This document shows positions 5,585-62,335 of a stretch of DNA of 64,000 bases, piece after piece. A program made the translations under genes and the position numbers. The stretch is from Octopus sinensis (lineage: Eukaryota): positions 159,526,001 to 159,590,000 of the forward strand of contig NC_043000.1 of NCBI RefSeq assembly GCF_006345805.1, written 5' to 3'. The notes under the pieces were generated by a model. It saw only the letters and a list, made by a program, of their open reading frames with translations. It was not told the DNA's origin and searched no databases. Position 1 is the stretch's first letter, and each line of letters starts with the position of its first letter.

Positions 5585-5785
5585 GACTTGTTTCAGTCAT
5601 GTGACTGTGGCCATGCTGGAGCACCACCTTTAGTCGAGCAAATCGACCTCAGGATTTATTCTTTGTAAACCTAGTACTTATTGTACCGATCTCTTTTGCC
5701 GAACCGCTAAGTTACGGGGACGTAAACACACAAGCATCGGTTGTCAAGCGATGTTGGGAGGACAAATATAGACATACACACACAC

Positions 5786-5820
<35 letters not shown>

Positions 5821-5982
5821 GACGGGATTCTTTCAGTTTCCGTCTATCAAATCCACTCACAAGGATTTGGTCGGCCCGAGGCTATAGTAGAAGACACTTG
5901 CCCAAGGAATCGTGCAGAGGGTCTGACCCGGAACCATGTGGTTTGTAAGCAAGCTACTTACCACACAGTCACTCCTACGCCT
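5585..5982 (-). mobile_element. tRNA-derived SINE, family B (CORE-like, internal TA/TG microsatellite)
   Basis: Reverse complement of the element at 30341-30780 and 61898-62335; internal (TA)n at about 5787-5819. Confidence 0.88.
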
Positions 5983-12811: not shown

Positions 12812-13714
12812 ACTTAGATAAATTTAGATATGTTTCGACCAAAGATTGGTCCAGGCCATGTCTAACTTAATAGCACCACCTGATAGGATTATTCGAATCC
12901 TGTTTAAGGCAAGTTTTGTTTTTGTTTAAGTCAAGTTTTGTTCAAGTAGTGAGTTCTTGTTGGGCGAGTTGTATCCAATTATGGGTGGCTTATCTGGTAT
13001 TCTTTAAAGGAATCTATCCAGACTCCGTTTAAAGTTGATGGGATCCTTTTCCTCTTTGATCTCCCTCGGAACAATGTTAAACAGAGCAGGGCCTGTTGAG
13101 GAAAAGAAATTATGTTGCAGTGTACATGTATGTTGTGATCTTGAATTGGGCAGGGGACGTATGGCCCGTGGTCCCAGTCTTGGATGAACCTTGAAGCTAA
13201 TGTTAAGGTCGTTTGGGCAAAGTTGGCGGTATATTTTCCACATCGTACAAATGATGTACCGCTCACGGCGACGCTGGAGGGAGTAAAGTTTCATGGCTTT
13301 AAGGCGATCCCAATAATCGAGAGCAGCCATGCCTTCAATTCGTTTAGTGAGTGCCCACTGGGGTGACTCAATTCTGGAGATGTTTTGTCTTGTATGGGGA
13401 GACCACAGTGGGCAGCAGTATTCAAGGTGTGGCCGTCCAAGGGAGGAAAAAAGTGTTATGATGACACCTTGTTCTCTGGACCGGAAAGTTCTTAAGATCC
13501 AGGAACTCATCCTACGAGCTATATCGACCTTCTTGTTGATGTGTGCACTCCAACTGAGATCGTCATCAACAATTACACCCAGGTCTCTGATATTGTTAGA
13601 GGCTGTGAGCGGTTCCCCTTAAGGAAGAGTGTATGGTTGTTTTAGTGAGGAATTTCTTCCAAAATTTTCCCTCATTCAGTTGCATTTTGTTTCTGTCTGC
13701 CCATTGACTCACAG

Positions 13715-30069: not shown

Positions 30070-30340
30070 TGTTTGACACTAAGATTTCTACCAACCGGCC
30101 GTCCCTTCTCCTCTTTGTAATAATAGCTTCTAACGCAGACACAAAACAACGTATTTTGAAGATATGGGAGAGTTGAACTTGATAAATCAGGATTTAAACT
30201 CAGACCTCAATGGAAAGTAACTGAATACTTACTTTGTTCAATACTCTATTCTACTATGACACCAGACAGGTGATTTATAAACGCAAGAAGCGCATATAAC
30301 CGACGAGGAAGTAGCTTTAATACATACAAAAATTCATATA

Positions 30341-30502
30341 GGCGCAGGAGTGGCTGTGTGGTAAGTAGCTTGCTAACCAACCACATGGTTCCGGGTTCAG
30401 TCCCACTGCGTGGCATCTTGGGCAAGTGTCTTCTGCTATAGCCCCGGGCCGACCAATGCCTTGTGAGTGGATCTGGTAGACGGAAACTGAAAGAAGCCTG
30501 TC

Positions 30503-30562
<60 letters not shown>

Positions 30563-30780
30563 GTGTGTGTATGAGTTTGTGTGTCTGTGTTTGTTCCCCT
30601 AGCATTGCTTGACAACCGATGCTGGTGTGTTTACGTCCCCGTCACTTAGCGGTTCGGCAAAAAGTGACCGATAGAATAAGTACTGGGCTTACAAAGAACA
30701 AGTCCCGGGGTCGATTTGCTCGACTAAAGGCGGTGCTCCAGCATGGCCGCAATCAAATGACTGAAAAGAGTAAAAGAGTA
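30341..30780 (+). mobile_element. SINE family B, full length
   Basis: Head GGCGCAGGAGTGGCTGTGTGGTAAG..GGGTTCAGTCCC, CORE-like TTGGGCAAGTGTCTTCT, internal (TA)n(TG)n, 3' AAAGAGTAAAAGAG. Confidence 0.9.
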
Positions 30781-33164: not shown

Positions 33165-33750
33165 CCTTTACTTGTTTCAGTCATTTGACTTCAGCCATAC
33201 TGGAGCACCGCCTTTAGTCGAACAAATCGACCCCCAGGACTTATTCTTTGTTGTTGTTTGTTCCTTCTCGAGCCATGCCTGGCTCATAAGGGCCGGTTTC
33301 CCGGTTTCCTTGGCGTATAGGTTCCCCACCTGAACGGGACGCCGGTCCGTCGCAGGTGAGCTGCAAGATGCTGGAGGAAAGAGTGAGAGAAACTTGTGGC
33401 GAAAGAGTCAGCAGAATTTCACCATTACCTTCTGCCGGAGCCGCGTGGAGCTTAGGTGTTTCATTCATAAACACACACATCGCCCGGTTTTAGATTCGAA
33501 TCCGCGATCCCTCGACTGCGAGTTTGCTGCTCTAACCACTAGGCCATGTGCCTCCAGGACTTATTCTTTGTAAGCCTAGAACTTATTCTATCGGGTCTTT
33601 TGCCGAACAGCTAAGTTAAGAGAACGTAAACACGCTAGCATCGGTTGTCAAGCATTGATGGAAGTGGGGGTAGGGGCAAATACAGATACACGCAATGGGA
33701 CTGAACCCGGACCCATGTGGTTGGGAAGCAAGCTTCTTACTACACAGCCA
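33165..33750 (-). mobile_element. SINE family B, interrupted by a family C insertion
   Basis: Family B sequence resumes on both sides of 33252-33555; middle part deleted. Confidence 0.82.
33252..33555 (-). mobile_element. SINE family C, tail type 2, full length
   Basis: Head GGAGGCACATGGCCTAGTGGTTAG, (AAC)n tail; 16-bp TSD AGGACTTATTCTTTGT at 33236-33251 and 33556-33571. Confidence 0.9.
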
Positions 33751-33770
33751 GTTATTACATAAAATACTTA

Positions 33771-34160
33771 GGCGCAGGAGTGGCTGTGTGGTAAGTAGCT
33801 TGTTTACCAACCACATGGTTCCAGGTTCAGTCCCACTGCGTGGCACCTTGGGCAACTGTCTTCTACTATAGCTTCGGGCCGACCAAAGCCTTGTGAGTGG
33901 ATTTGGTAGACGGAAACTGAAAGAAGCCCGTCGTATATATGTATATATATATGTATGCGTGTATGTTTGTGTTTGTCTCCCTAGCATTGCTTGACAACCG
34001 ATGCTGGTGTGTTTATGTCCGTCACTTAGCGGTTCGGCAAAAGAGACAGATAGAATAAGTACTAGGCTTACAAAGAATAAGTCTGGGAGTCGAGTTGCTA
34101 GACTAAAGGCGGTGCTCCAGCATGGCCGCAGTCAAATGACTGAAACAAGTAAAAGAGTAA
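33771..34160 (+). mobile_element. SINE family B, full length
   Basis: Near-identical to 30341-30780, with a shorter internal microsatellite. Confidence 0.9.
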
Positions 34161-34891
34161 TCACTAACCACTCATTTTTTCAAGAGAACCATATCGCAGA
34201 ATCGCTCAATGGTGTCATCTGCACGAGACGTGGTCGGGTTCCTTCGAGATGTGTAACATTTATGGCGGCCATATTTCAGTATTACCATTCAAGTCTCTTT
34301 GATTATGACTCTTTGTACATAGAGATCTACCTGAATTTTGCATTTATTATGTTTTCGTATGTCTGTGTGTCCATACACTATGTTTTTATATGCCCTGAAT
34401 TATGTATGTGTATATTTAAGTTTGAGTACATCTGTATATATTTACAGTGATGTTTTGAATAACCAAAGCGAGTTAACGAATGAGTCACTACATGGCCGCT
34501 AGATCTGCTAGATATAGCAACCAAATTTCCCAAAATCTCATTGAAGTGTATGTATTAGATAATAACGAAAGATACACCAGAAAATGTAGCTTTTGACAAA
34601 AGAGAGAAAAAAAGAAAATTAGATGGGAAGGTCATAAGAGGAACGTTTTTAATCATAGTTCTTCTCAATCTGAACAGGCCGGGGGCTAAACAGCAACGAA
34701 ACTTATATTAAAGCAGCACATGGAATTTAACTGCAAGACCAATATGCAGTAATTGATAGCCAACTGCATTACAAGCTGCAGCGCACATAATTCAATTGCA
34801 CAACATCAAACATCACTGCACACACATACACCGAAGCACATGGAGGGCTGTTCACATGCTCAGCGAGAAATACACATTCATAAACATGTCG

Positions 34892-34929
<38 letters not shown>

Positions 34930-35029
34930 GTTACAATCCATGATCTAAGCAAATTACATTGCAGCTGCACACAGAAACTGCAAGACCAATGTGCAGTAAT
35001 TTACCCCTCCCCTACCTGCCAGTGATGAC

Positions 35030-36638
35030 AGTGACACCGCCCTCCACCTACGTTCTGCAAATTCCTCTAGCTACTCCTCAAATTATAGAAATACTATTTC
35101 TATCTCATTTCCTCTCCCTCTTTGCAACTCCCTTACTCATTATTACTACTTTTTTCTCCACTGCCCTTCTCTCCTCTCTCTCCTTTTCCTTTTCTATAAC
35201 AGCTTTTATCATCTCTCCACCTTAGAAGTCTTTATTTCACATCCTCCTCCTCTCACATTCTCCTCCTCCCGTTGGTTTGGATGATGAATTCTCCCCTTTC
35301 ATTTGCCTATCCCCACCCTTTACTCTGCCTGTTGGTAGATCCCACCTTTTCTCTCTTCCTCCACCTTTCTTGCACCACCCGTCTGTCTAATTCCTCCTCG
35401 CCCACCCTTTATCCTGTGTTCTTTTTTTTTATCCTCTCTCCACTCTCCCCCCCCCCCTTACTGTATTCACACTCCTATCTTTCCACCGCAAACACAAGCA
35501 CCACCAACACATACGTCGCCGCCATCACTACCACTAATACAAGCACCACCATCTCTACCACCGTCACACCTACCACCAACACGAGCCCCGCCGCCATTAC
35601 CATCAGCATAAAAAAGAGATCCACTACAACCGCCTATAAATCAACCGACATTACTACCTGCACCCTTTACTCTCTCACTCTCTCTTTTTTTTTATTTATC
35701 AACAACAATGATTAGCTAGATCCAATGCCAACTTTAGGAAAACTACTACCAAAACCACACTCACTACCACCAGTAATACTATAAAAGTTACTACCACCAC
35801 CGCTACTCCTTTTACAAGCGCCTCAACCATCGCCACGAAAGCGAGACCGCTATTGTAAAATAGCGGTCTGCTTTTCGTGGATCAAATATTAAGGATCAAA
35901 TACTAACAGCTCAAACATTACTGCCAATCCTGCCATTACCTGCCTCTTGTTACTGACATCAGCACCACCACCGGCGCCAACCTATTAGCTCAATAAACAA
36001 TTATATTGATAATGATGATCGCCATCGTAATCCCCTTCGCCATCGTCATTAACGTAACTGCTACCCAGAACTTTCTCGTACAACCACACTTTTATTACTA
36101 TCAAACAGTCGCATCGCTACTCTCCACACCTCCTCCTCCTCCTCTACCCTCAAACTTCTCCGCCTCCAACCAATCCACTGCCGTTCGATCGTTTACTCAC
36201 TCTCACTCACTCGGGCAAATTTAGTAGGGATAACTATGCATCTTCGCGCATGTGTGCATTGGATCGAGAAACTGCAAGAGAATGGATGACAGAGGATGAA
36301 TGAGGTGGGGGGAGGAGAGGGCAAGAGGGGAGATAGAGAGAGAGAGAGGGAGAGAGAGAGAGGGAGAGCAATAAGATAGATGAGAACACATTAAGGAGAA
36401 AGAGAGCGGGGGATAAAAGAAGGAAACCGAAAGGGAAATAACTAAATGAAGAGAGATAAAAATAAAAATAAGGGGAGAGGGATAAAAAGAGGAGGAAGGG
36501 GAACGATGATAAAGATAGGAGAGGAAGAATGTGGTGGTGGTGGGGGGGGAGAGATATGGGAAGAGACAAGAACGAACGGGAAAAATAGCTGAGAAAGGAA
36601 AAAAGAAAACAATAAAGAGAAATAAAGATTCGGCAAGG

Positions 36639-36683
<45 letters not shown>

Positions 36684-37060
36684 AGGGAGAGGGGGAACAG
36701 AAGTGTGAACAAGAGGAGAGAAAGAATCAGGGATGAAATAAAGATAGAGAGATCAATGTGAGTGGATCCATGTATATGTGTGTATATATGCTGATACATG
36801 TTTGCAAGCATGCCCTCATGCATTTGTGAAATGTCAGCTTATTTCTATGTATGCGTCTTCCTCCTGTCTTTGTGTATGCGCATGCGTACGTTTATTTCTG
36901 TGAGTGGTTATGTCTACATATTCATGTGTAACGACAGTTGTTGTGTATGTACGCGGCCTCCACTGTTTCTTAATGGATGTGTGGAAGTTCCTACGAAGCC
37001 ATGTGCGCGCGTGTATGTCCATGTGAGTGGATTTTCATTACTGATTATCTATGTGCATGT

Positions 37061-37099
<39 letters not shown>

Positions 37100-37940
37100 T
37101 TGTGCGTGTAGCGTTTCATATATGTACGAGTGTGTGCGCGCGCGAGTGAATTTCTGTTAGAACTCAGTGTACGTATATGCGTGTGTGCTTGTACCCGTAT
37201 AAGAAACGAAACTAGAATCTATACCGACTTCACATTTCCTACACACACACACACACACACACATGTATACACGCAAATACAGACATATACACGCACACAC
37301 TCATACACGAATCCATTGATGAGAACGACTTCAATTTAAAGTAAAACTGTAAAGGAGAGTGAGTGTGAGGGAGAAGGATTGAGGAAGAGGAGGAGGAGGG
37401 GACCAAGGATAGTGGTAGGAAGAAATGCCGAGGGATGAAAAACAGTAGGAGGATTGGTGGATTGATGTGGTAGGAGGATTAGAAGCGGGAGGAAGCAAAG
37501 AGGTGGGGGGAAAGAAAGCAGGAAGGAAGAAGAGAAGGGAGTGTGAGGTGATTTAGGAGAGCAGTAGTAAGAGAAAATGTTGATGGGGGGGAAAAAGGCT
37601 GGTAAAAGGAATAGCGAAGTGGAGGCAAAGGGAAGCAGGAGGGAGAGATGAGAAAGGATCACGGGGAGAAGAGGAATAGTGGGAGTAAGTAGTGCCCAGT
37701 AGTTGTGGGGGCACGCAATGGAAGAGGAAAAAGGGGTGGAATGATTAAAATCACAGTGGGGGGATAAGGTAAAGGGTTGGGGGAAATGTCAGCGACATGT
37801 AAAGGCCGTTGTGTTGCACAAGTTAATACGTAAAACTGAACAAGGGTTGAGTGGGGGGAGGGTTAAAATTTGATTATAATTAGTAGTAGTAGTAATAGCA
37901 GTTGAAACAGCAGTGGTGGTGGTGATGGTAGAGGTTGTAA
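35030..37940. repeat. mosaic of cryptically simple tracts (CT-rich, ACC/ACT, GA-rich, TG, GA-rich, GTA/GTG)
   Basis: Strongly strand-skewed blocks are visible; they are the source of S/L/P- and T-rich spurious ORFs. Confidence 0.8.
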
Positions 37941-38461
37941 GGATGGGAATCCCTATATTGCTGAATCTGCATTTTGTGCGACACCCTTACCGATCCTACC
38001 AGGCCAATACACAGTCACTACAATTGCTAGACATAGTTACTAAAACTCGTTAAAAATCATATTCTAGTGTCTTATACAAGCACCGAAACATTCGATAATG
38101 AAATCCTTGAGTGTGTTATGTCTGGAGAAAAAATAAATTGAGATAGGATGGTTCCGGTTAAAAGGTTTTTCAGTAGAGATGACCTTGGGTCAACCGTCAA
38201 CAACAACGAAAATATTACTGGAAGAAGCGTGGTGAATAAGGATGAACTTAGGGAAATATATTCAAATGGGGTGGTGGTAAGAATTTTGCTCAGTTAAGGG
38301 GTATGTAGTCAATGTCATACGCAATAGACGGTGGGGGGGGAGAGAAAAATTTCTATCTTTCTAAACTAGGAATCGAAACATTTCGAACTTCTACAGAGAA
38401 AGCAAACAAACACACACACACACACACACACGTGTATTTATATTACATGAACATGTGCGAG

Positions 38462-38494
<33 letters not shown>

Positions 38495-38593
38495 ATTTGT
38501 GTGTGTGTGCGCGCGCATAAGTTGGGAAAAAATTGTAACACCACCTACGGTGTTTGAAGTGCTACATTTGCGAAAAACATATATATATATATA

Positions 38594-47803: not shown

Positions 47804-47840
47804 ACTTACCTGAGAAATGCTAGATGTAGGAGGCAAAGTA
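47804..47840 (-). other. candidate recursive splice site or 10-nt microexon
   Basis: Minus strand: TGTTTACTTTGCCTCCTACATCTAG CATTTCTCAG|GTAAGT. Confidence 0.3.
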
Positions 47841-48817: not shown

Positions 48818-49019
48818 TTGGCTGCCACACAGTCTCTGCCAAGGAAGTTCACTCACAAAACATTGGTTTATCCAAGGCTATGGAACATGACTCTTGCACA
48901 AGGTACCACGTAATGGTACTGAATCTGAAAGCATGAGGCTGCAAAGCGAAGCTCTGAAGTTAATTACTCACTTTTAAAAATTTTTTTCATTTTGCAATAG
49001 ATTCCATTCTTATGTTGGT

Positions 49020-50045
49020 GTGGACCGGTGTGTGTGTGAGCGTGTGTTGTATGTGTGTGTGTGCGCGCGCAAGTGTATATCCGAAGATGCGCATGCGTTA
49101 GGGAATGTGCGTTAATATCTGCAGAGATATCCACAAACGTACTTTGGGAACATGCGAATGCCAATACTTGCGTGTGTGGTCGCGTGCGGGAGTGTGCATT
49201 TATGCGTGATCTTACGTGTAAATGTGTGTGCGTGTGTGTGTGCGTAATCGAAAGACTGCGTTGATGTGCGCGTGTGTGTTTGCACGGACATATGCATTTC
49301 TATGCATGGACATGTGTGTGTCTTCGTGAGTGACTGTGCAAGCTTCGATGACAGAGTTCGTGTCCGTGTGTGCGTGCCTGAGTAGCGTTTTCCTGCGCTT
49401 CATTGAGCGCTTATACGCTCGCGAGCGAGCTTGTGCATACGTTTGGGTATTTCTGCATGCACATGTGAACGTGTATGTACTTCTATGGCACCGTGTAAAT
49501 ATTTGCATATGTGACTACATGTGAACGTGTGTGCGAATATTAAAGCATGTGAGCGCACAGAAATGAGCATATGCAAGCGCATGCAACCGCGAGTATTTAT
49601 GCTTGTATGTGAACGGGTCTCTGTGCATGTATGCGTGTGTATATGTATGTGTGCATGCGCGCGCATGCAGACGCACGTGTATGTGCACGTATGCGAATAC
49701 AAGTGTGCGCGAGCGGATGCAAACAAGTGTGCACTAGAAAGCGTATGCAAACAGCTGTGCATGCGCAAGTGCGAACACGGATGTGTGTACGCGTATGACA
49801 ACACGTGTACGTGTGCACGTATGAAAGCGCAGGTGTGCACACGTGTATACGAACACAACTATGTGCACGCTTCTGCGTTTGCAAGCGCAACTTTGCATGC
49901 GCCAATGCGAAAGAGAGATTATTCTCTGAGCTTGTGAATGCGCAAATGAAAATGGAAAATGTGTGCATGTGATCGTGTCACGTGAAAGGACATGTGCACA
50001 CCAATAAACATACACACGAGCGAATATTTGCACGCGTGTTTGCAA
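49020..50045. repeat. about 1-kb decayed (TG)n tract retaining purine-pyrimidine alternation
   Basis: Dominated by TG/CG/CA/TA steps (GCGC, TGCA, CACG, CGTG). Confidence 0.8.
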
Positions 50046-50439
50046 TGCCTTTATTGTATGCCATGGTGCCTTACTGATTGACTAAACAGCAACCCAATCG
50101 ATCCTACCAATGAGAGAATGGTTACGTAAGGCATGAGAACATCAGCCCTCACTATTCCTGATTAAATTATGCTAAACAGTGACGAGACGAATAAAGAGAT
50201 ATAAGCATGGATAGAAATGAATTTAATCTTGCACAAGTAAGGTATAAAATGAACAGGTGCTTGCGCTCGCAAACCAACATAAGCACAGAAATACATATGA
50301 AACAGAAATGTCGAGATTACATGAGACACAAAAGAGAAGGAAATAATTCAGAGAGAGACAGACAGAGAGAGAGAGAAAGAGAAGCGGGGTAAAAGAGATT
50401 CTAACACAACCAAAGATGAATGGCTGAAAGGAGTTGAAT

Positions 50440-56051: not shown

Positions 56052-56089
<38 letters not shown>

Positions 56090-56091
<2 letters not shown>

Positions 56092-56495
56092 GGTTTCAAA
56101 TTTCAACAACTTTGGAGGAGGGAAAGCCGATTACATTAACACCATTGTTCAACTGATACTTATTTTATCGACCCTGAAAGGATCAAAGACAAAGTCGACC
56201 TCTGCGGAATTTGAACTAAGAAAGTCAAAACGGATGAAATGCTGCTAAGCATTGTCGGCATCCTAACGAATCTGACACCACCTTAATAATAATCCTTTCT
56301 ACTATAGACACATTTGGAGGAGGGGATGAAACAATTAAATCGACCCGAGTAATCAAATAGTACTTCTTCTATCGACTCCGAAAGGATGAAAGACAAAGTT
56401 GACCTCGGCAGAATTTGAACTCAGAACGTGAAGGCGGTCGAAATGCTGTTAAGCATTTTGCCCGGCGTGCAACGATTCTGCCAGATCCTGCCTTA
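56090..56495 (-). mobile_element. two tandem diverged SINE family A variants
   Basis: Two GAAAGGAT.AAAGACAAAGT.GACCTC..GAATTTGAACT segments. Confidence 0.78.
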
Positions 56496-56510
56496 ATAAT
56501 AATAACAACA

Positions 56511-56597
56511 ACTTACCCAGAAATTTTCAGCAAGTTAGTGACAAAGTGAACAATCAAAAATTGCCGGTGACTTACCTGAAAAATAGGAAAAAAAAGG
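56511..56597 (-). other. candidate recursive splice site with a 59-nt RS-exon
   Basis: Minus strand: CCTTTTTTTTCCTATTTTT CAG|GTAAGT (junction 56576/56575), 59 nt to TGG|GTAAGT (junction 56517/56516). Confidence 0.55.
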
Positions 56598-59107
56598 CTG
56601 AGTTGGAAATACTGAAGTTATTTTTATCATCATCAAACATTCTCATAAACACAACATAATAAACATCACAAAAGTCAACAACCATCACCATCAAAATCAT
56701 CATAGTTTGACATTCACATCATCATCTCGTATTTTCTTTGCTTATATTTTCCATTCTCCAAATACCTAGCAGTGAATGAAAGCCTTGCTTGACACACTTA
56801 TCAGAGACACTGATGTTTAACTAGAACTCCTCTCAGATTGAGTAGATTTATGATCAAAGGTATTACATCTTTTGTTGTACATCAGGTACTAATTACATTG
56901 TCAATACTATCCTTTTTTTATTTAAGAGTGTAGCGTGCAATTGGATGGAGATTTTGCTGTTTCGAGCAGATCAAACGATCGTAGAAAGCGTAACTAGGGA
57001 CTAAGAAGTTTGTAAGTGAGAGAGTTTGCAGCCTTTATATATTTTGCTCTTTTTAAATCTCTGCCTTCTCTTTAAATATTAACTTCAAAAATGTCTACAT
57101 GTAATATTATGATGAAATGCATGTACGTTACAGTCACAAGGACGTTAACAACAGCTATAATTCGAAATATAGAAGAGGATTTTCAACTGATAGCTACACG
57201 CGTATATATGGAGCAGTACCTGAGTTTGGAAGAAATCACTTGTTAAAGGCTGGATCAGTGTTAAAGGTTGGATCAGTAATAAAGGTGAATCAGTGATGTG
57301 TCAAATATCTGATTTTCATAAGGTAAGTGGTAAGTATTGTACCGCATCAAATTAGTACCCAGAATAAGATTATTCCGGGTTGATATTTCGTGTCCGTGTA
57401 TTAAAAAGGAAGAGGGCAGTGAATTGTAGTCGGGAGGGAGGATTTCAAATAGTGTCTGTAAAAGAAAAGTAGTGGCAGGTGAAAAAAATTTGAGAAGCAA
57501 TAGTGAAGGCTCCCTTCCGTTGTCTCAGTATACAGAAACTTATATTTCGATATTCACGAGGTGGATTTGTAGCCCATCGACTAACAACTCCCTGATAAAA
57601 GGTATTTTTTTTCATCTCTCAAGTAGAATTTCAGCATTCTGAGCCTACGGAAACATTCGGCGATTTCACAAAGATACTGCTTTTATATAAATGTGTTATG
57701 TAAGCTTTCTTTTGAACTAAATAATGATATTGAGAATAAGTAACTTGACAATAGATGAAAAGCGAAGCAAATACAGTATCGTAGCAATGGCCTTCTCTTT
57801 TGGTTGACATATCTCCTAGCATCTCTTTTCTGTTATTTCACAAGACCTTTTTCTTTTTTCTCATCCGATTCTAAATTCTACCACATGTGATTTTGCTTTT
57901 CAGAATTTACAAGTCAATAAAATAAGTACCAATCAAGTAATGAAGACAAAATTACACAGCTACGTCTATCTTCAACCACTAAAATGTCTTTGCTTTTAAT
58001 GATTTCTTCGAAGTAAAATAAAATAGGGTGAAAAGTACAAATGCAATAATTATCCAATAATTATGCAGCTGTGTATTTCATTTGAATACGAGACGATTTC
58101 AAACGCACGAAATATATTTGGAGTAAACCCACGTATTTAAAGTACATTAAATGTATAAATTACAGCAAATATGAAACGTCAAGAAATCTGAAAGTAGTTT
58201 TTGTCTAGCATTAAGCCAGCCGTAATCATCCCATCTTATTTTTCAGGCAACTTGCCCCTCAACGTGTAATTTGAGGGTGCTATTTCTAGCATATCGAGCA
58301 CATACGAAGGTTACGTCTGAAAGGATTTTCCAGTGGATTATTTACATAAAGTATTTTTACTTGATAGGGCGAGTGATTATGTGTGGGATTACGCTGATAG
58401 TGAAAGAAATTCAATGCCGACATGCTTACAGTGTATAACTGGCACTAAGAGCTACACACAAAACAAACTGTGCCATGAAAGACGCATACAATACCATAAG
58501 GGCAACGTAGGCGAGGATTATAATTTACTTGCAGCGCAGCAATGTGTAAACTATACAAATCTCTGGAAAAAAATTAAAATCGTTTGAACAATATTTGTGA
58601 AGTGGCGAGAATAAATGAAATGAAAAGGAATCGTTAGTTTATTAGACGAAACATTTCATCGTATTTGTTTTGACTCTTTACATTCTGAGCTAAACCCCTC
58701 TTGAAGTCAAACTTGACTTTCATCCCTTCGCGTTCGATACAATAAAGTATATGTTAAATATTGGGGTTGATGGTATCGATTAACCATGTTCCCAGAAAAC
58801 GGCTGACCTTGTGCCTGATTCACAAACTATAATTACAATTATTATTATTTATATTATCAACGTTGCGGGAGGTGCAAACAGTAGCGCAACGGGGATATCA
58901 CTCGTTGTGCTTGCTTAGACTTCTTTTACGTGCAATTCAAATCAAGCAGAATCAATTTTGACTACAATCATTTTGCAGGGCGCATAAAACGGTACCAGGT
59001 TTAGTTCTATATAATAGATTGATGGTTCGTTATGGATGTATCATATTCCGACGACAAGTTATCCTTTCAAAGAGACTCAGTGTTGTTGACATAGAGTGTG
59101 ATTTGAT

Positions 59108-60919: not shown

Positions 60920-61216
60920 TTCTTACAGCATTCACCCGGGGTGGGTTGAGCTGGCTTTATTCATCCTCAATGCTGCATCTCTCACAAACGCCGACCAGGC
61001 CTGGCGATTTGAGGCTAACGACCGCGTGATCTCCAACCACTCCTTATTCCAGCGGCGAACGCCGTAGTTATGGGGGCCTAGGTTGGGTTCCAGATCAGCC
61101 TTGACTGTCATCAACCAGGTTTTTCGTTGTCCACCACATCGCTTTCGCCAAACCTGAAGGGGAGCTCGGGCAATTGCTTGGTAGATGAATTCTCCTGGTT
61201 GTCGACGGAGAATACG
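60920..61216 (-). mobile_element. 5'-truncated RTE-clade LINE 3' end
   Basis: Open frame 61216-60932: RILRRQPGEFIYQAIARAPLQVWRKRCGGQRKTWLMTVKADL..LASNRQAWSAFVRDA..*, typical of the RTE ORF C-terminus. Confidence 0.82.
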
Positions 61217-61620: not shown

Positions 61621-61897
61621 TTCAGAAGCCAAAATATTTCCAGATGATTTCTGGGTCTGAAACTTCTTGGGACGCGGTGAACTGCTATGGCTCCACACCC
61701 TAGATTGCTGCTTTGTCTGGGGTTCAAAATGATGAGGCTAAGTTTCATCAACTGTAACTAAACGCACAATAAAATCAGCCTCTCCCGCTGCAAACCGGTC
61801 GAAAATCGTCTTTGATGTCGTCACTCTGGTGTGCTTCTGATCTGCGTTCAGGTATTTCGGCAACAATTTTATGGAAAGCTTTCTCATGTTTAGAAAT
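61621..61897 (-). mobile_element. mariner transposase internal fragment (irritans/Himar-like)
   Basis: Single frame MRKLSIKLLPKYLNADQKHTRVTTSK..RLVTVDET*PHHFEPQTKQQSRVWSHSSSPRPKKFQTQKSSGNILAS, with a TAG at the conserved DETW tryptophan. Confidence 0.88.
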
Positions 61898-62060
61898 AGG
61901 CGTAGGAGTGGTTGTGTGGTAAGTAGCTTGCTTACGAACGAAATGTTTCCGGGTTCAGTCCCACTGAGTGGTACCTTGGGCAAGTGTCTTCTACTATAGC
62001 CTCGGGCCGACCAAAGCCTTCTGACTGGATTTGGTAGACGGAAACTGAAAGAAGCTCGTC

Positions 62061-62123
<63 letters not shown>

Positions 62124-62335
62124 TGTGTGTGTTTGTGTGTCTGTGTTTGTCCCCACAACATCGCTTGACAACCGATGCTGGTGTCTTTACGTCCCCGTAA
62201 CTTAGCGGTTCTGGAAAAGGGAACGATAGAATAAGTACTAGGCTTACAAAGAATAAGTCCTGGGGTCGATTTGCTCGACTAAAGGCGATGCTCCAGCATG
62301 GCCACTGTCAAAATGACTGAAACAAGTAAGAGAGT
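61898..62335 (+). mobile_element. SINE family B, full length
   Basis: Same layout as 30341-30780, with a long internal (TA)n. Confidence 0.9.

What the first reader, a model, noticed from the sequence alone, without database searches (positions are those of the whole stretch)
56511..56597. Textbook recursive-splicing site with a 59-nt cryptic RS-exon on the minus strand
Seen: a 19-nt polypyrimidine tract with one purine (CCTTTTTTTTCCTATTTTT) runs directly into CAG|GTAAGT. This is a strong acceptor whose first exonic bases regenerate a consensus donor, and a second GTAAGT donor follows 59 nt downstream. The 59-nt segment does not match any repeat I can see elsewhere in the window. Established: this 3'SS/5'SS plus short cryptic exon plus downstream 5'SS layout defines ratchet points and RS-exons in very long Drosophila and vertebrate neuronal introns. 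Inference: the window lies in a giant minus-strand intron that is removed in steps. I am not aware of recursive splicing being characterised in cephalopods, which have long introns in neural genes. Inclusion of 59 nt would shift the reading frame, so it could also act as a poison exon.
Basis: partly seen in the sequence, partly recalled or inferred. Interest (0 to 1): 0.72.

Follow-up and report, generated by a model that had tools for sequence, protein, structure and literature searches.

The report
Candidate recursive splice site, unverified
The minus strand really carries a near-perfect "acceptor fused to donor" splice signal, then a 59-base mini-exon and a second donor, as at recursive splice sites in giant fly and vertebrate introns, but I could not test whether it lies in a transcribed intron, is conserved, or is used.

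Summary
The parts are a polypyrimidine tract at 56597-56579 (18 of 19 pyrimidines), CAG at 56578-56576, GTAAGT at 56575-56570, a 59-nt segment at 56575-56517, and a second GTAAGT at 56516-56511.

It is the best fused acceptor/donor among 366 AGGT positions in the window (24.4 bits; the next scores 15.8). I expect about 0.0002-0.002 such layouts per 64-kb window by chance. That is unusual for one window, yet still roughly 10-90 per multi-gigabase genome.

Every feature of a ratchet point with a cryptic RS-exon that sequence alone can show is met. None of the features that decide membership could be tested. These are location in a long intron on the transcribed strand, conservation, and RNA intermediates.

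No coding exon is recognisable anywhere in the 64 kb. Two strand signals are each significant but, read by mammalian rules, point opposite ways. No orthologous or transcript sequence was reachable.

My estimates are about 0.4 for a genuine recursive site and about 0.38 for an unused chance motif. The cephalopod origin was not verified. This is a reasonable candidate, not a discovery.

The parts
56602..56608 (-). Best candidate branch point, UUCCAAC, with the branch A at 56603 (-28 from the junction)
   Evidence: It matches UACUAAC at 5 of 7 positions. No yUnAy lies between -18 and -50. The AG whose G has 22 nt between it and the junction lies only 4-5 nt past this A, too close to compete. An alternative UAAC has its A at 56618 (-43). 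Inferred, weak.
56579..56597 (-). Polypyrimidine tract CCTTTTTTTTCCTATTTTT (18/19 pyrimidines)
   Evidence: It is one of only 5 tract-plus-YAG sites of this purity on both strands of the window.
56576..56578 (-). CAG acceptor; the junction lies between 56576 and 56575
   Evidence: The acceptor scores 11.8 bits and ranks 3rd of 7087 AG.
56570..56575 (-). GTAAGT: intronic half of the donor that would be regenerated (ratchet-point donor)
   Evidence: With the genomic CAG it scores 12.7 bits and ranks 1st of 7799 GT. The real exonic half would come from the unknown upstream exon.
56517..56575 (-). 59-nt putative cryptic RS-exon (37% G+C); frame 1 is open (VSHRQFLIVHFVTNLLKIS) and frames 2 and 3 have stops
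   Evidence: It is unique in the window. It contains CACTAAC, a branch-point-like heptamer of no obvious role.
56511..56516 (-). Second donor, GGG|GTAAGT
   Evidence: It scores 8.9 bits and ranks 44th of 7799 GT.
56495..56510 (-). TGTTGTTATTATTATT microsatellite-like flank between the second donor and the SINE head
   Evidence: Other SINE copies have unrelated 5' flanks, so this stretch is flank and not SINE.
56054..56494 (-). Tandem pair of diverged SINEs in minus orientation (about 56494-56284 and 56293-56082) ending in a (TTA)12 tail at 56090-56054. This is context, not part of the splice signal.
   Evidence: Copies are 74-84% identical to 16 other copies in the window. The head is AAGGCGGCGAGCTGGCAGAAACG.

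Best explanation
This is a genuine spliceosome-readable composite: an intronic ratchet point with a cryptic 59-nt RS-exon on the minus strand.

The proposed mechanism is inferred from the fly and vertebrate model and nothing in it was shown here.

1. U2AF and U2 bind the long pyrimidine tract, the CAG, and a branch point near -28.
2. U1 binds the downstream GGG|GTAAGT, so the 59-nt segment is defined as an exon.
3. The upstream exon is spliced to 56575.
4. That junction recreates a donor, made of the last three exon bases plus GTAAGT. This donor out-competes the downstream donor.
5. The 59 nt and the rest of the intron are removed in a second step and leave no trace in the mRNA.
6. If the regenerated donor loses the competition, the 59 nt is included, shifts the frame, and acts as a poison exon.

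Only the sequence anatomy and its statistical rarity were shown.
For: - The layout is exact.
- It is by far the best fused acceptor/donor in the window: 24.4 bits against 15.8 for the next of 366 AGGT sites.
- The chance expectation is about 2e-4 to 2e-3 per window.
- The 59-nt length, out-of-frame content and downstream donor match the description of fly cryptic RS-exons: about 50 nt, generally out of frame, flanked by a splice donor (PMC8605326).
- The acceptor is very strong, as at all nine reference human RS sites (PMC6110456).
- No exon is recognisable in 64 kb, which is compatible with a very long intron.
- T exceeds A by 3.9% on the minus strand (p=0.014). From my own knowledge, this is the direction seen on the sense strand of mammalian introns.
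- In human data, 60% of conserved intronic AGGT sites with a strong acceptor have junction reads. A site this strong would probably be used if it is transcribed.
Against: - There is no evidence of minus-strand transcription, an enclosing gene, conservation, or RNA intermediates.
- A multi-gigabase genome should hold tens of equally good chance sites.
- SINEs (14:4) and both LINE fragments lie in sense on the minus strand. Under the mammalian rule that retroelements in introns tend to be antisense, this argues against minus being the gene strand.
- No consensus yUnAy branch point lies in the usual window, and two AGs lie upstream, at -22 and -36 by the distance of their G from the junction.
- The two donors have identical intronic halves, so the required donor hierarchy cannot be judged.
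- In humans only 342 of 36,870 motif-based sites passed the junction-read criteria, and 16 showed a sawtooth.
Confidence: 0.4

Rival explanations
1. This is a fortuitous juxtaposition of splice-like signals in non-coding, repeat-rich DNA that is not used. The site would be intergenic, antisense to the local transcript, or simply ignored.
For: - Extrapolating the window's own frequencies to about 2-3 Gb gives roughly 10-90 sites of equal quality by chance.
- No exon, gene or conserved element is detectable in the window.
- An old SINE pair sits 16 nt past the second donor, and the surroundings look like ordinary AT-rich filler.
- The branch point is mediocre.
- From my own knowledge plus PMC5534336, intron and intergenic DNA are roughly equal in animal genomes. 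That gives only about 20-25% prior odds that a random site lies in an intron on the sense strand.
Against: The per-window expectation is only about 1e-3. The motif is not merely good: it combines the top donor with a top-3 acceptor, and it has a properly spaced second donor and an out-of-frame segment. Each of these is an independent requirement of the RS-exon model.
Confidence: 0.38
2. This is an ordinary alternative exon, either a 59-nt cassette or poison exon or the first part of a longer exon. Its 5' end merely happens to begin with GTAAGT. It would be included through the second donor without recursive re-splicing.
For: The acceptor and the downstream donor are both strong, and the pair ranks third among all acceptor-donor pairs in the window. 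Frame 1 of the 59 nt is open. In mammals most exons with RS features are expressed exons rather than silent ratchet points (PMC8605326).
Against: The 19-residue translation has no detectable relatives, and the segment has intron-like composition at 37% G+C. A length that is not a multiple of 3, with stops in two frames, is typical of cryptic RS-exons. A GTAAGT at the very start of an included exon would normally be re-spliced unless it is repressed.
Confidence: 0.12
3. The signal is a by-product of a mobile element or belongs to the other strand. On the plus strand the pyrimidine tract reads AAAAATAGGAAAAAAAAGG. It could be the decayed A-rich tail of an old plus-oriented retroposon, as antisense Alu tails create acceptors in primates. 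The unique block 56512-58712 could then be a mid-copy element not repeated within 64 kb.
For: The window is dense in retroelements, with 18 SINE pieces, 2 LINE fragments and a MITE-like family. From my own knowledge, antisense A-rich tails are a well-known source of cryptic acceptors.
Against: There is no second copy of the block in the window even at word size 7. Its open segments have no Pfam or protein homology. The window's own SINEs end in (TTA)n, not in A-rich tails. This origin would also not exclude use as a recursive site.
Confidence: 0.05

Closest known systems
Drosophila intronic ratchet points with cryptic RS-exons (Ubx, kuz, Bx; Hatton 1998, Burnette 2005, Duff 2015, Joseph 2018/2021, Pai 2018)
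   Same: It has a long pyrimidine tract, then CAG|GTAAGT, then a short (about 50 nt) out-of-frame cryptic exon, then a downstream donor. The window is consistent with a very long exon-free stretch (PMC8605326; PMC6110457).
   Different: Fly sites are defined by location in annotated long introns, ultraconservation of the acceptor|donor core, and sawtooth or junction RNA evidence. None of these is available here. The organism is different and not verified.
Vertebrate RS-sites and RS-exons in long neuronal genes (Sibley 2015; Zhang 2018; Blazquez 2018)
   Same: It has an AGGT core, a very strong 3' splice site, a downstream 5' splice site that defines an RS-exon, and a premature stop or frameshift on inclusion (PMC6110456).
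   Different: Human sites were accepted only with conservation (PhastCons of at least 0.5) plus junction reads, and 16 of them with a sawtooth. The regenerated donor is scored with the upstream exon's last 3 nt, which are unknown here.
Poison or cassette exons and cryptic pseudoexons in giant introns (e.g. DMD pseudoexons, PMC7175933)
   Same: It is a short, frame-shifting segment flanked by good splice sites deep in non-coding DNA.
   Different: Such exons need no donor at their own 5' end. Here the first six bases are a perfect GTAAGT.
Exonisation of retroelement-derived polypyrimidine tracts (antisense Alu model)
   Same: A T-rich tract precedes an AG in retroelement-rich DNA, and a SINE pair lies 16 nt beyond the second donor.
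   Different: The tract and the 59 nt are not part of any repeat detectable in the window. The local SINEs carry (TTA)n tails and lie downstream, in the same orientation.

Membership tests
Recursive splice site (ratchet point) with cryptic RS-exon | [quoted passage not shown] | tested here: met
   CAG|GTAAGT lies at 56578-56570 on the minus strand. It is the best of 366 AGGT positions, at 24.4 bits against 15.8 for the next.
Recursive splice site (ratchet point) with cryptic RS-exon | Strong 3' splice site (long polypyrimidine tract, YAG) | tested here: met
   The tract has 18/19 pyrimidines. The acceptor ranks 3rd of 7087 AG with a generic weight matrix. MaxEntScan was not available.
Recursive splice site (ratchet point) with cryptic RS-exon | Branch point 20-50 nt upstream | tested here: inconclusive
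   No yUnAy lies in that range. UUCCAAC has its A at -28 (5/7 match to UACUAAC) and UAAC has its A at -43. Intervening AGs lie at -22 and -36 by the distance of their G from the junction.
Recursive splice site (ratchet point) with cryptic RS-exon | Short cryptic RS-exon bounded by a downstream 5' splice site | tested here: met
   The segment is 59 nt. The second donor GGG|GTAAGT scores 8.9 bits and ranks 44th of 7799 GT. The fly norm is about 50 nt.
Recursive splice site (ratchet point) with cryptic RS-exon | RS-exon out of frame or carrying stops, so that inclusion is deleterious | tested here: met
   59 mod 3 = 2, and two of three frames have stops.
Recursive splice site (ratchet point) with cryptic RS-exon | Regenerated donor stronger than the RS-exon donor | tested here: inconclusive
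   Both intronic halves are GTAAGT. The exonic half of the regenerated donor comes from an unknown upstream exon.
Recursive splice site (ratchet point) with cryptic RS-exon | Location inside a long intron, on the transcribed strand | not testable with these tools
   No annotation was available. No exon was found in 64 kb on either strand. Strand signals conflict.
Recursive splice site (ratchet point) with cryptic RS-exon | Evolutionary conservation of the acceptor|donor core | not testable with these tools
   No orthologous DNA was reachable. The exact 25-mer is absent from JGI metagenomes. Open segments within 1.5 kb have no relatives in the protein collection. That collection does not hold the window's own ORFs either, so the negative says nothing about conservation.
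Recursive splice site (ratchet point) with cryptic RS-exon | RNA intermediates: junction reads into the site, sawtooth coverage, lariats | not testable with these tools
Ordinary coding cassette exon | Reading frame preserved, and coding sequence with relatives or conservation | tested here: not met
   59 nt is not a multiple of 3. The open segments around it have no Pfam or protein hit.
Interspersed repeat (SINE, LINE or MITE) as carrier of the motif | Other copies of the sequence | tested here: not met
   The window holds no other copy of 56504-57100. The SINE begins only at 56494. The window is 64 kb, so a mid-copy family cannot be excluded.

The most novel reading that the evidence does not exclude
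Cephalopods, or whatever large-genome invertebrate this is, use fly-style silent ratchet points with cryptic RS-exons to remove giant introns, and this site is a first concrete example outside insects and vertebrates. That would imply the mechanism is either ancestral to bilaterians or arises repeatedly wherever introns become very long.
Probability: 0.3. Interest if true: 0.55.

Novelty: new member of a known kind. Interest (0 to 1): 0.33.

Why it matters
In the literature I could search, recursive splicing has been characterised in Drosophila and vertebrates. No paper in the searched library links it to cephalopods or other molluscs.

A validated site in a third, distant lineage with giant introns would show how general the mechanism is. 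It would also give a handle on how such genomes process very long neural genes.

A single motif cannot carry that weight. Its main value is as a seed for a cheap genome-wide test: count the motif on sense against antisense strands of long introns, then check RNA-seq. If the site is unused, it only illustrates how good a chance splice-like signal can look.

Tried and rejected
1. Looking up window ORFs in the public protein and contig collection, to find the source contig, its annotation or identical transcripts. None of the 11 ORFs tried is on record.
2. Rfam and tRNA scans of the window. Nothing found.
3. A systematic exon hunt. All stop-free segments of at least 40 aa that passed a sequence-complexity filter, in six frames, were scanned against Pfam, and only chance-level hits appeared. 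A crude splice-site-pair exon finder found no coding-like exon. A 3536-aa concatenate of the most protein-like segments had no relative among 5.8 billion proteins.
4. An orthologue hunt for conservation. A concatenate of open segments within 1.5 kb of the site had no hits. The exact 25-mer was absent from JGI metagenomes. Both negatives are uninformative, because the collections evidently do not cover this genome.
5. Taxon check. The LINE fragment's best relatives are unnamed, and the top hit sits on a 934-bp contig of GCA_024449705.1. The SINE head sequence was not found in the paper library. The cephalopod origin stays unverified.
6. Inferring the transcribed strand from composition. The TA skew favours minus (p=0.014). 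SINE and LINE orientation favours plus under mammalian rules. Poly(A)-signal counts are equal. I rejected this as inconclusive.
7. The idea that the motif is part of the adjacent SINE, or of a repeat in the window. I rejected it.

Full report
**What is there**

Reading the minus strand confirms the finding base for base. The sequence runs:

...UUCCAACUCAG-CCTTTTTTTTCCTATTTTT-CAG|GTAAGT-CACCGG...TTTCTGG|GTAAGT-TGTTGTTATTATTATT-[SINE].

| Feature | Window coordinates (minus strand) |
|---|---|
| Pyrimidine tract (18/19 pyrimidines) | 56597-56579 |
| CAG acceptor | 56578-56576 |
| First GTAAGT | 56575-56570 |
| 59-nt segment | 56575-56517 |
| Second GTAAGT | 56516-56511 |

The 59 nt are 37% G+C. 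They shift the frame (59 mod 3 = 2) and have stops in two of three frames.

**Is it more than chance?**

- The window has 7 AGGTRAGT octamers on its two strands. Only this one follows a strong pyrimidine tract.
- Using the window's own statistics, there are 30 tract-plus-YAG sites with at least 16/19 pyrimidines and 5 with at least 18/19. GTAAGT follows AG with frequency 8.5e-4.
- That gives an expectation of 0.025 or 0.004 fused motifs per window.
- A GTRAGT 30-150 nt downstream adds a factor of about 0.08. A donor at least as good as the one seen adds about 0.04.
- The whole layout is therefore expected about 2e-4 to 2e-3 times per 64-kb window.
- Order-5 Markov simulations agree. They gave 0.0075 fused motifs per window. 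With the second donor required as well, no tract of at least 16/19 pyrimidines turned up in 400 windows.
- With a generic splice-site weight matrix (frequencies from my own knowledge, not MaxEntScan) the site scores 24.4 bits, the best of 366 AGGT positions. The runner-up scores 15.8 bits.
- The acceptor ranks 3rd of 7087 AG and the donor 1st of 7799 GT.

The feature is a real statistical outlier in this window. Scaled to a genome of 2-3 Gb, the same numbers still predict roughly 10-90 equally good sites by chance.

**Surroundings**

- The block 56512-58712 has no other copy in the window.
Sixteen bases after the second donor, a pair of diverged SINEs begins in minus orientation (about 56494-56284 and 56293-56082). 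It ends in (TTA)12 at 56090-56054.
- Comparing the 5' ends of other copies shows that the SINE head is AAGGCGGCGAGCTGGCAGAAACG. The TGTTGTTATTATTATT stretch is flank, not SINE.
- The copies are about 74-84% identical to their relatives in the window, so the insertion is old. It does not touch the donor.
- The branch point is the weakest part of the acceptor. No yUnAy lies between -18 and -50.
- The best candidates are UUCCAAC (A at 56603, -28) and UAAC (A at 56618, -43). Upstream AGs lie at -22 and -36, measured from their G to the junction.

**Gene context**

This is the crux of the interpretation, and I could not settle it.

- Stop-free segments of at least 40 aa that passed a sequence-complexity filter, in six frames, were scanned against Pfam. 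Only chance-level hits appeared.
- A splice-pair exon finder found nothing coding-like.
- A 3536-aa concatenate of the most protein-like segments of both strands found no relative among 5.8 billion proteins.
- Rfam and ARAGORN found nothing.

The only protein-like pieces are retroelement debris:

- a LINE reverse-transcriptase C-terminal fragment at 13007-13618 (minus strand), with 712 relatives, some carrying PF00078;
- a second fragment at 60935-61216 (minus strand) that I identify by eye, from my own knowledge, as a LINE C-terminal tail;
- SINEs;
- a MITE-like family.

So the window is 64 kb of exon-free, repeat-rich DNA. That fits part of a giant intron and intergenic sequence equally well.

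Two strand asymmetries are statistically real:

- T exceeds A by 3.9% on the minus strand in unique sequence (t-test over sixteen 4-kb bins, p=0.014).
- SINEs lie 14:4 in minus orientation (the two-sided binomial p of about 0.03 is my own calculation).

Together they hint that the region is transcribed. By the rules known from mammals (my own knowledge), the first points to minus as the sense strand and the second to plus. Poly(A)-signal counts are equal. I treat the strand as undetermined.

**Conservation and expression**

- None of the 11 window ORFs I looked up is in the public protein and contig collection.
- Open segments within 1.5 kb of the site have no relatives there.
- The exact 25-mer across the junction is absent from JGI metagenomes.
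- These negatives say only that the collections do not cover this genome or its relatives. They are not evidence against conservation.
- The taxon is not verified. The cephalopod label rests on my recollection of octopus SINEs. The SINE head was not found in the paper library, and the LINE relatives are unnamed.

**Comparison with the known kind**

- Joseph et al. describe fly ratchet points as tandem acceptor|donor pairs in long introns.
- The core is ultraconserved, and the ratchet donor is generally stronger than the RS-exon donor.
- They report more than 500 sites in flies and nine fully suppressed ones originally in mammals (PMC8605326).
- Zhang et al. list four genomic features: long intron, AGGT, strong 3' splice site, and high conservation.
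- In their human data 36,870 motif-plus-conservation sites shrink to 342 with junction-read support and 16 with a sawtooth. Even so, 60% of the putative sites have some junction reads in 70 billion ENCODE reads (PMC6110456).
- Pai et al. found detected fly sites to be twice as conserved as control AGGT sites (PMC6110457).

Against this list, the present site meets every feature that sequence alone can show. These are the fused motif, the acceptor strength, the GTAAGT, the RS-exon length, the downstream donor, and the out-of-frame content. The branch point and the donor hierarchy are inconclusive.

The regenerated donor is the upstream exon's last three bases plus GTAAGT.

The three features that decide membership could not be tested. 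They are the intron and strand context, conservation, and RNA intermediates.

**Weighing**

From my own rough estimate, the human genome should contain about 5-30 chance sites of this stringency. About ten real, robust recursive sites have comparable motifs. A site this good is then real with probability around 0.25-0.65 in a vertebrate-like genome. The probability is near 1 in a fly-like genome and 0 if the lineage does not use the mechanism.

| Reading | Probability |
|---|---|
| Genuine ratchet point with cryptic RS-exon | about 0.4 |
| Unused chance motif | about 0.38 |
| Ordinary alternative or poison exon | about 0.12 |
| Retroelement by-product or other-strand feature | about 0.05 |

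The two leading readings are not separable with the evidence in hand.

**Novelty and interest**

No paper in the searched library connects recursive splicing with cephalopods or molluscs. A validated site would therefore be a new member of a known kind in a new lineage. That would be worthwhile but not surprising, because the mechanism needs only the ordinary spliceosome and very long introns.

As it stands this is a well-formed candidate resting on one motif. The quickest way forward is the annotation look-up, neural total RNA-seq, and a sense-versus-antisense census of the motif in long introns.

Noticed in passing
window 47809-47831 (minus strand): A second CAG|GTAAGT lies on the same strand, 8.8 kb downstream in minus-strand terms. 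It reads CTCCTACATCTAGCATTTCTCAG|GTAAGTGG. It is the second-best fused acceptor/donor in the window (15.8 bits). Its pyrimidine tract is weak (acceptor 3.1 bits), and no GTRAGT follows within 400 nt.
   Followed up: partly
window 13007-13618 (minus strand): A 204-aa open segment is the C-terminal part of a non-LTR retrotransposon reverse transcriptase. It has 712 relatives at E<=1e-5, the best 72-73% identical, and longer relatives carry PF00078. It has no Pfam hit of its own.
   Followed up: yes
window 60935-61216 (minus strand): An open segment (...GGQRKTWLMTVKADLEPN...NRQAWSAFVRDA...) looks to me like the extreme C-terminus of a LINE ORF2. It has no Pfam hit, and I left it out of the homology query.
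   Followed up: no
window 33552-34089; related pieces at 5772-5945, 30249-30641 and 61741-62307: A MITE-like element of about 540 bp has 41-nt terminal inverted repeats (93% complementary) and an internal 62-nt hairpin. Its copies share the translated motif RQASFSFRLPNPLTR and a (TA)n microsatellite.
   Followed up: partly
whole window: Two strand asymmetries are present. SINE copies lie 14 on the minus strand against 4 on the plus strand. T exceeds A by 3.9% on the minus strand in unique sequence (p=0.014). Together they suggest the region is transcribed, but by mammalian rules they point to opposite sense strands.
   Followed up: partly
window 34000-38000: G-C skew flips sharply, from -0.33 at 34-36 kb to +0.38 at 36-38 kb. 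The 34-36 kb half shows up only as low-complexity open frames rich in S, L, P and T. (CA)n- and (TG)n-rich arms lie at 37242-37307 and 38447-38509.
   Followed up: partly
window 48900-50100: This is the most G+C-rich stretch of the window (0.47). It is made of degenerate CA/TG-rich repeats that give long H/T/C/R-rich open frames on both strands. It has no protein homology.
   Followed up: no
window 57241-57295: An 18-nt tandem repeat (about 3 copies, 84% matches, unit TGTTAAAGGTGGATCAG) lies in the unique block 0.7 kb from the site.
   Followed up: no
window 56534-56540 (minus strand): CACTAAC, a near-consensus branch-point heptamer, lies inside the 59-nt segment, 18-24 nt before the second donor. 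No acceptor follows it, so its role, if any, is unclear.
   Followed up: no
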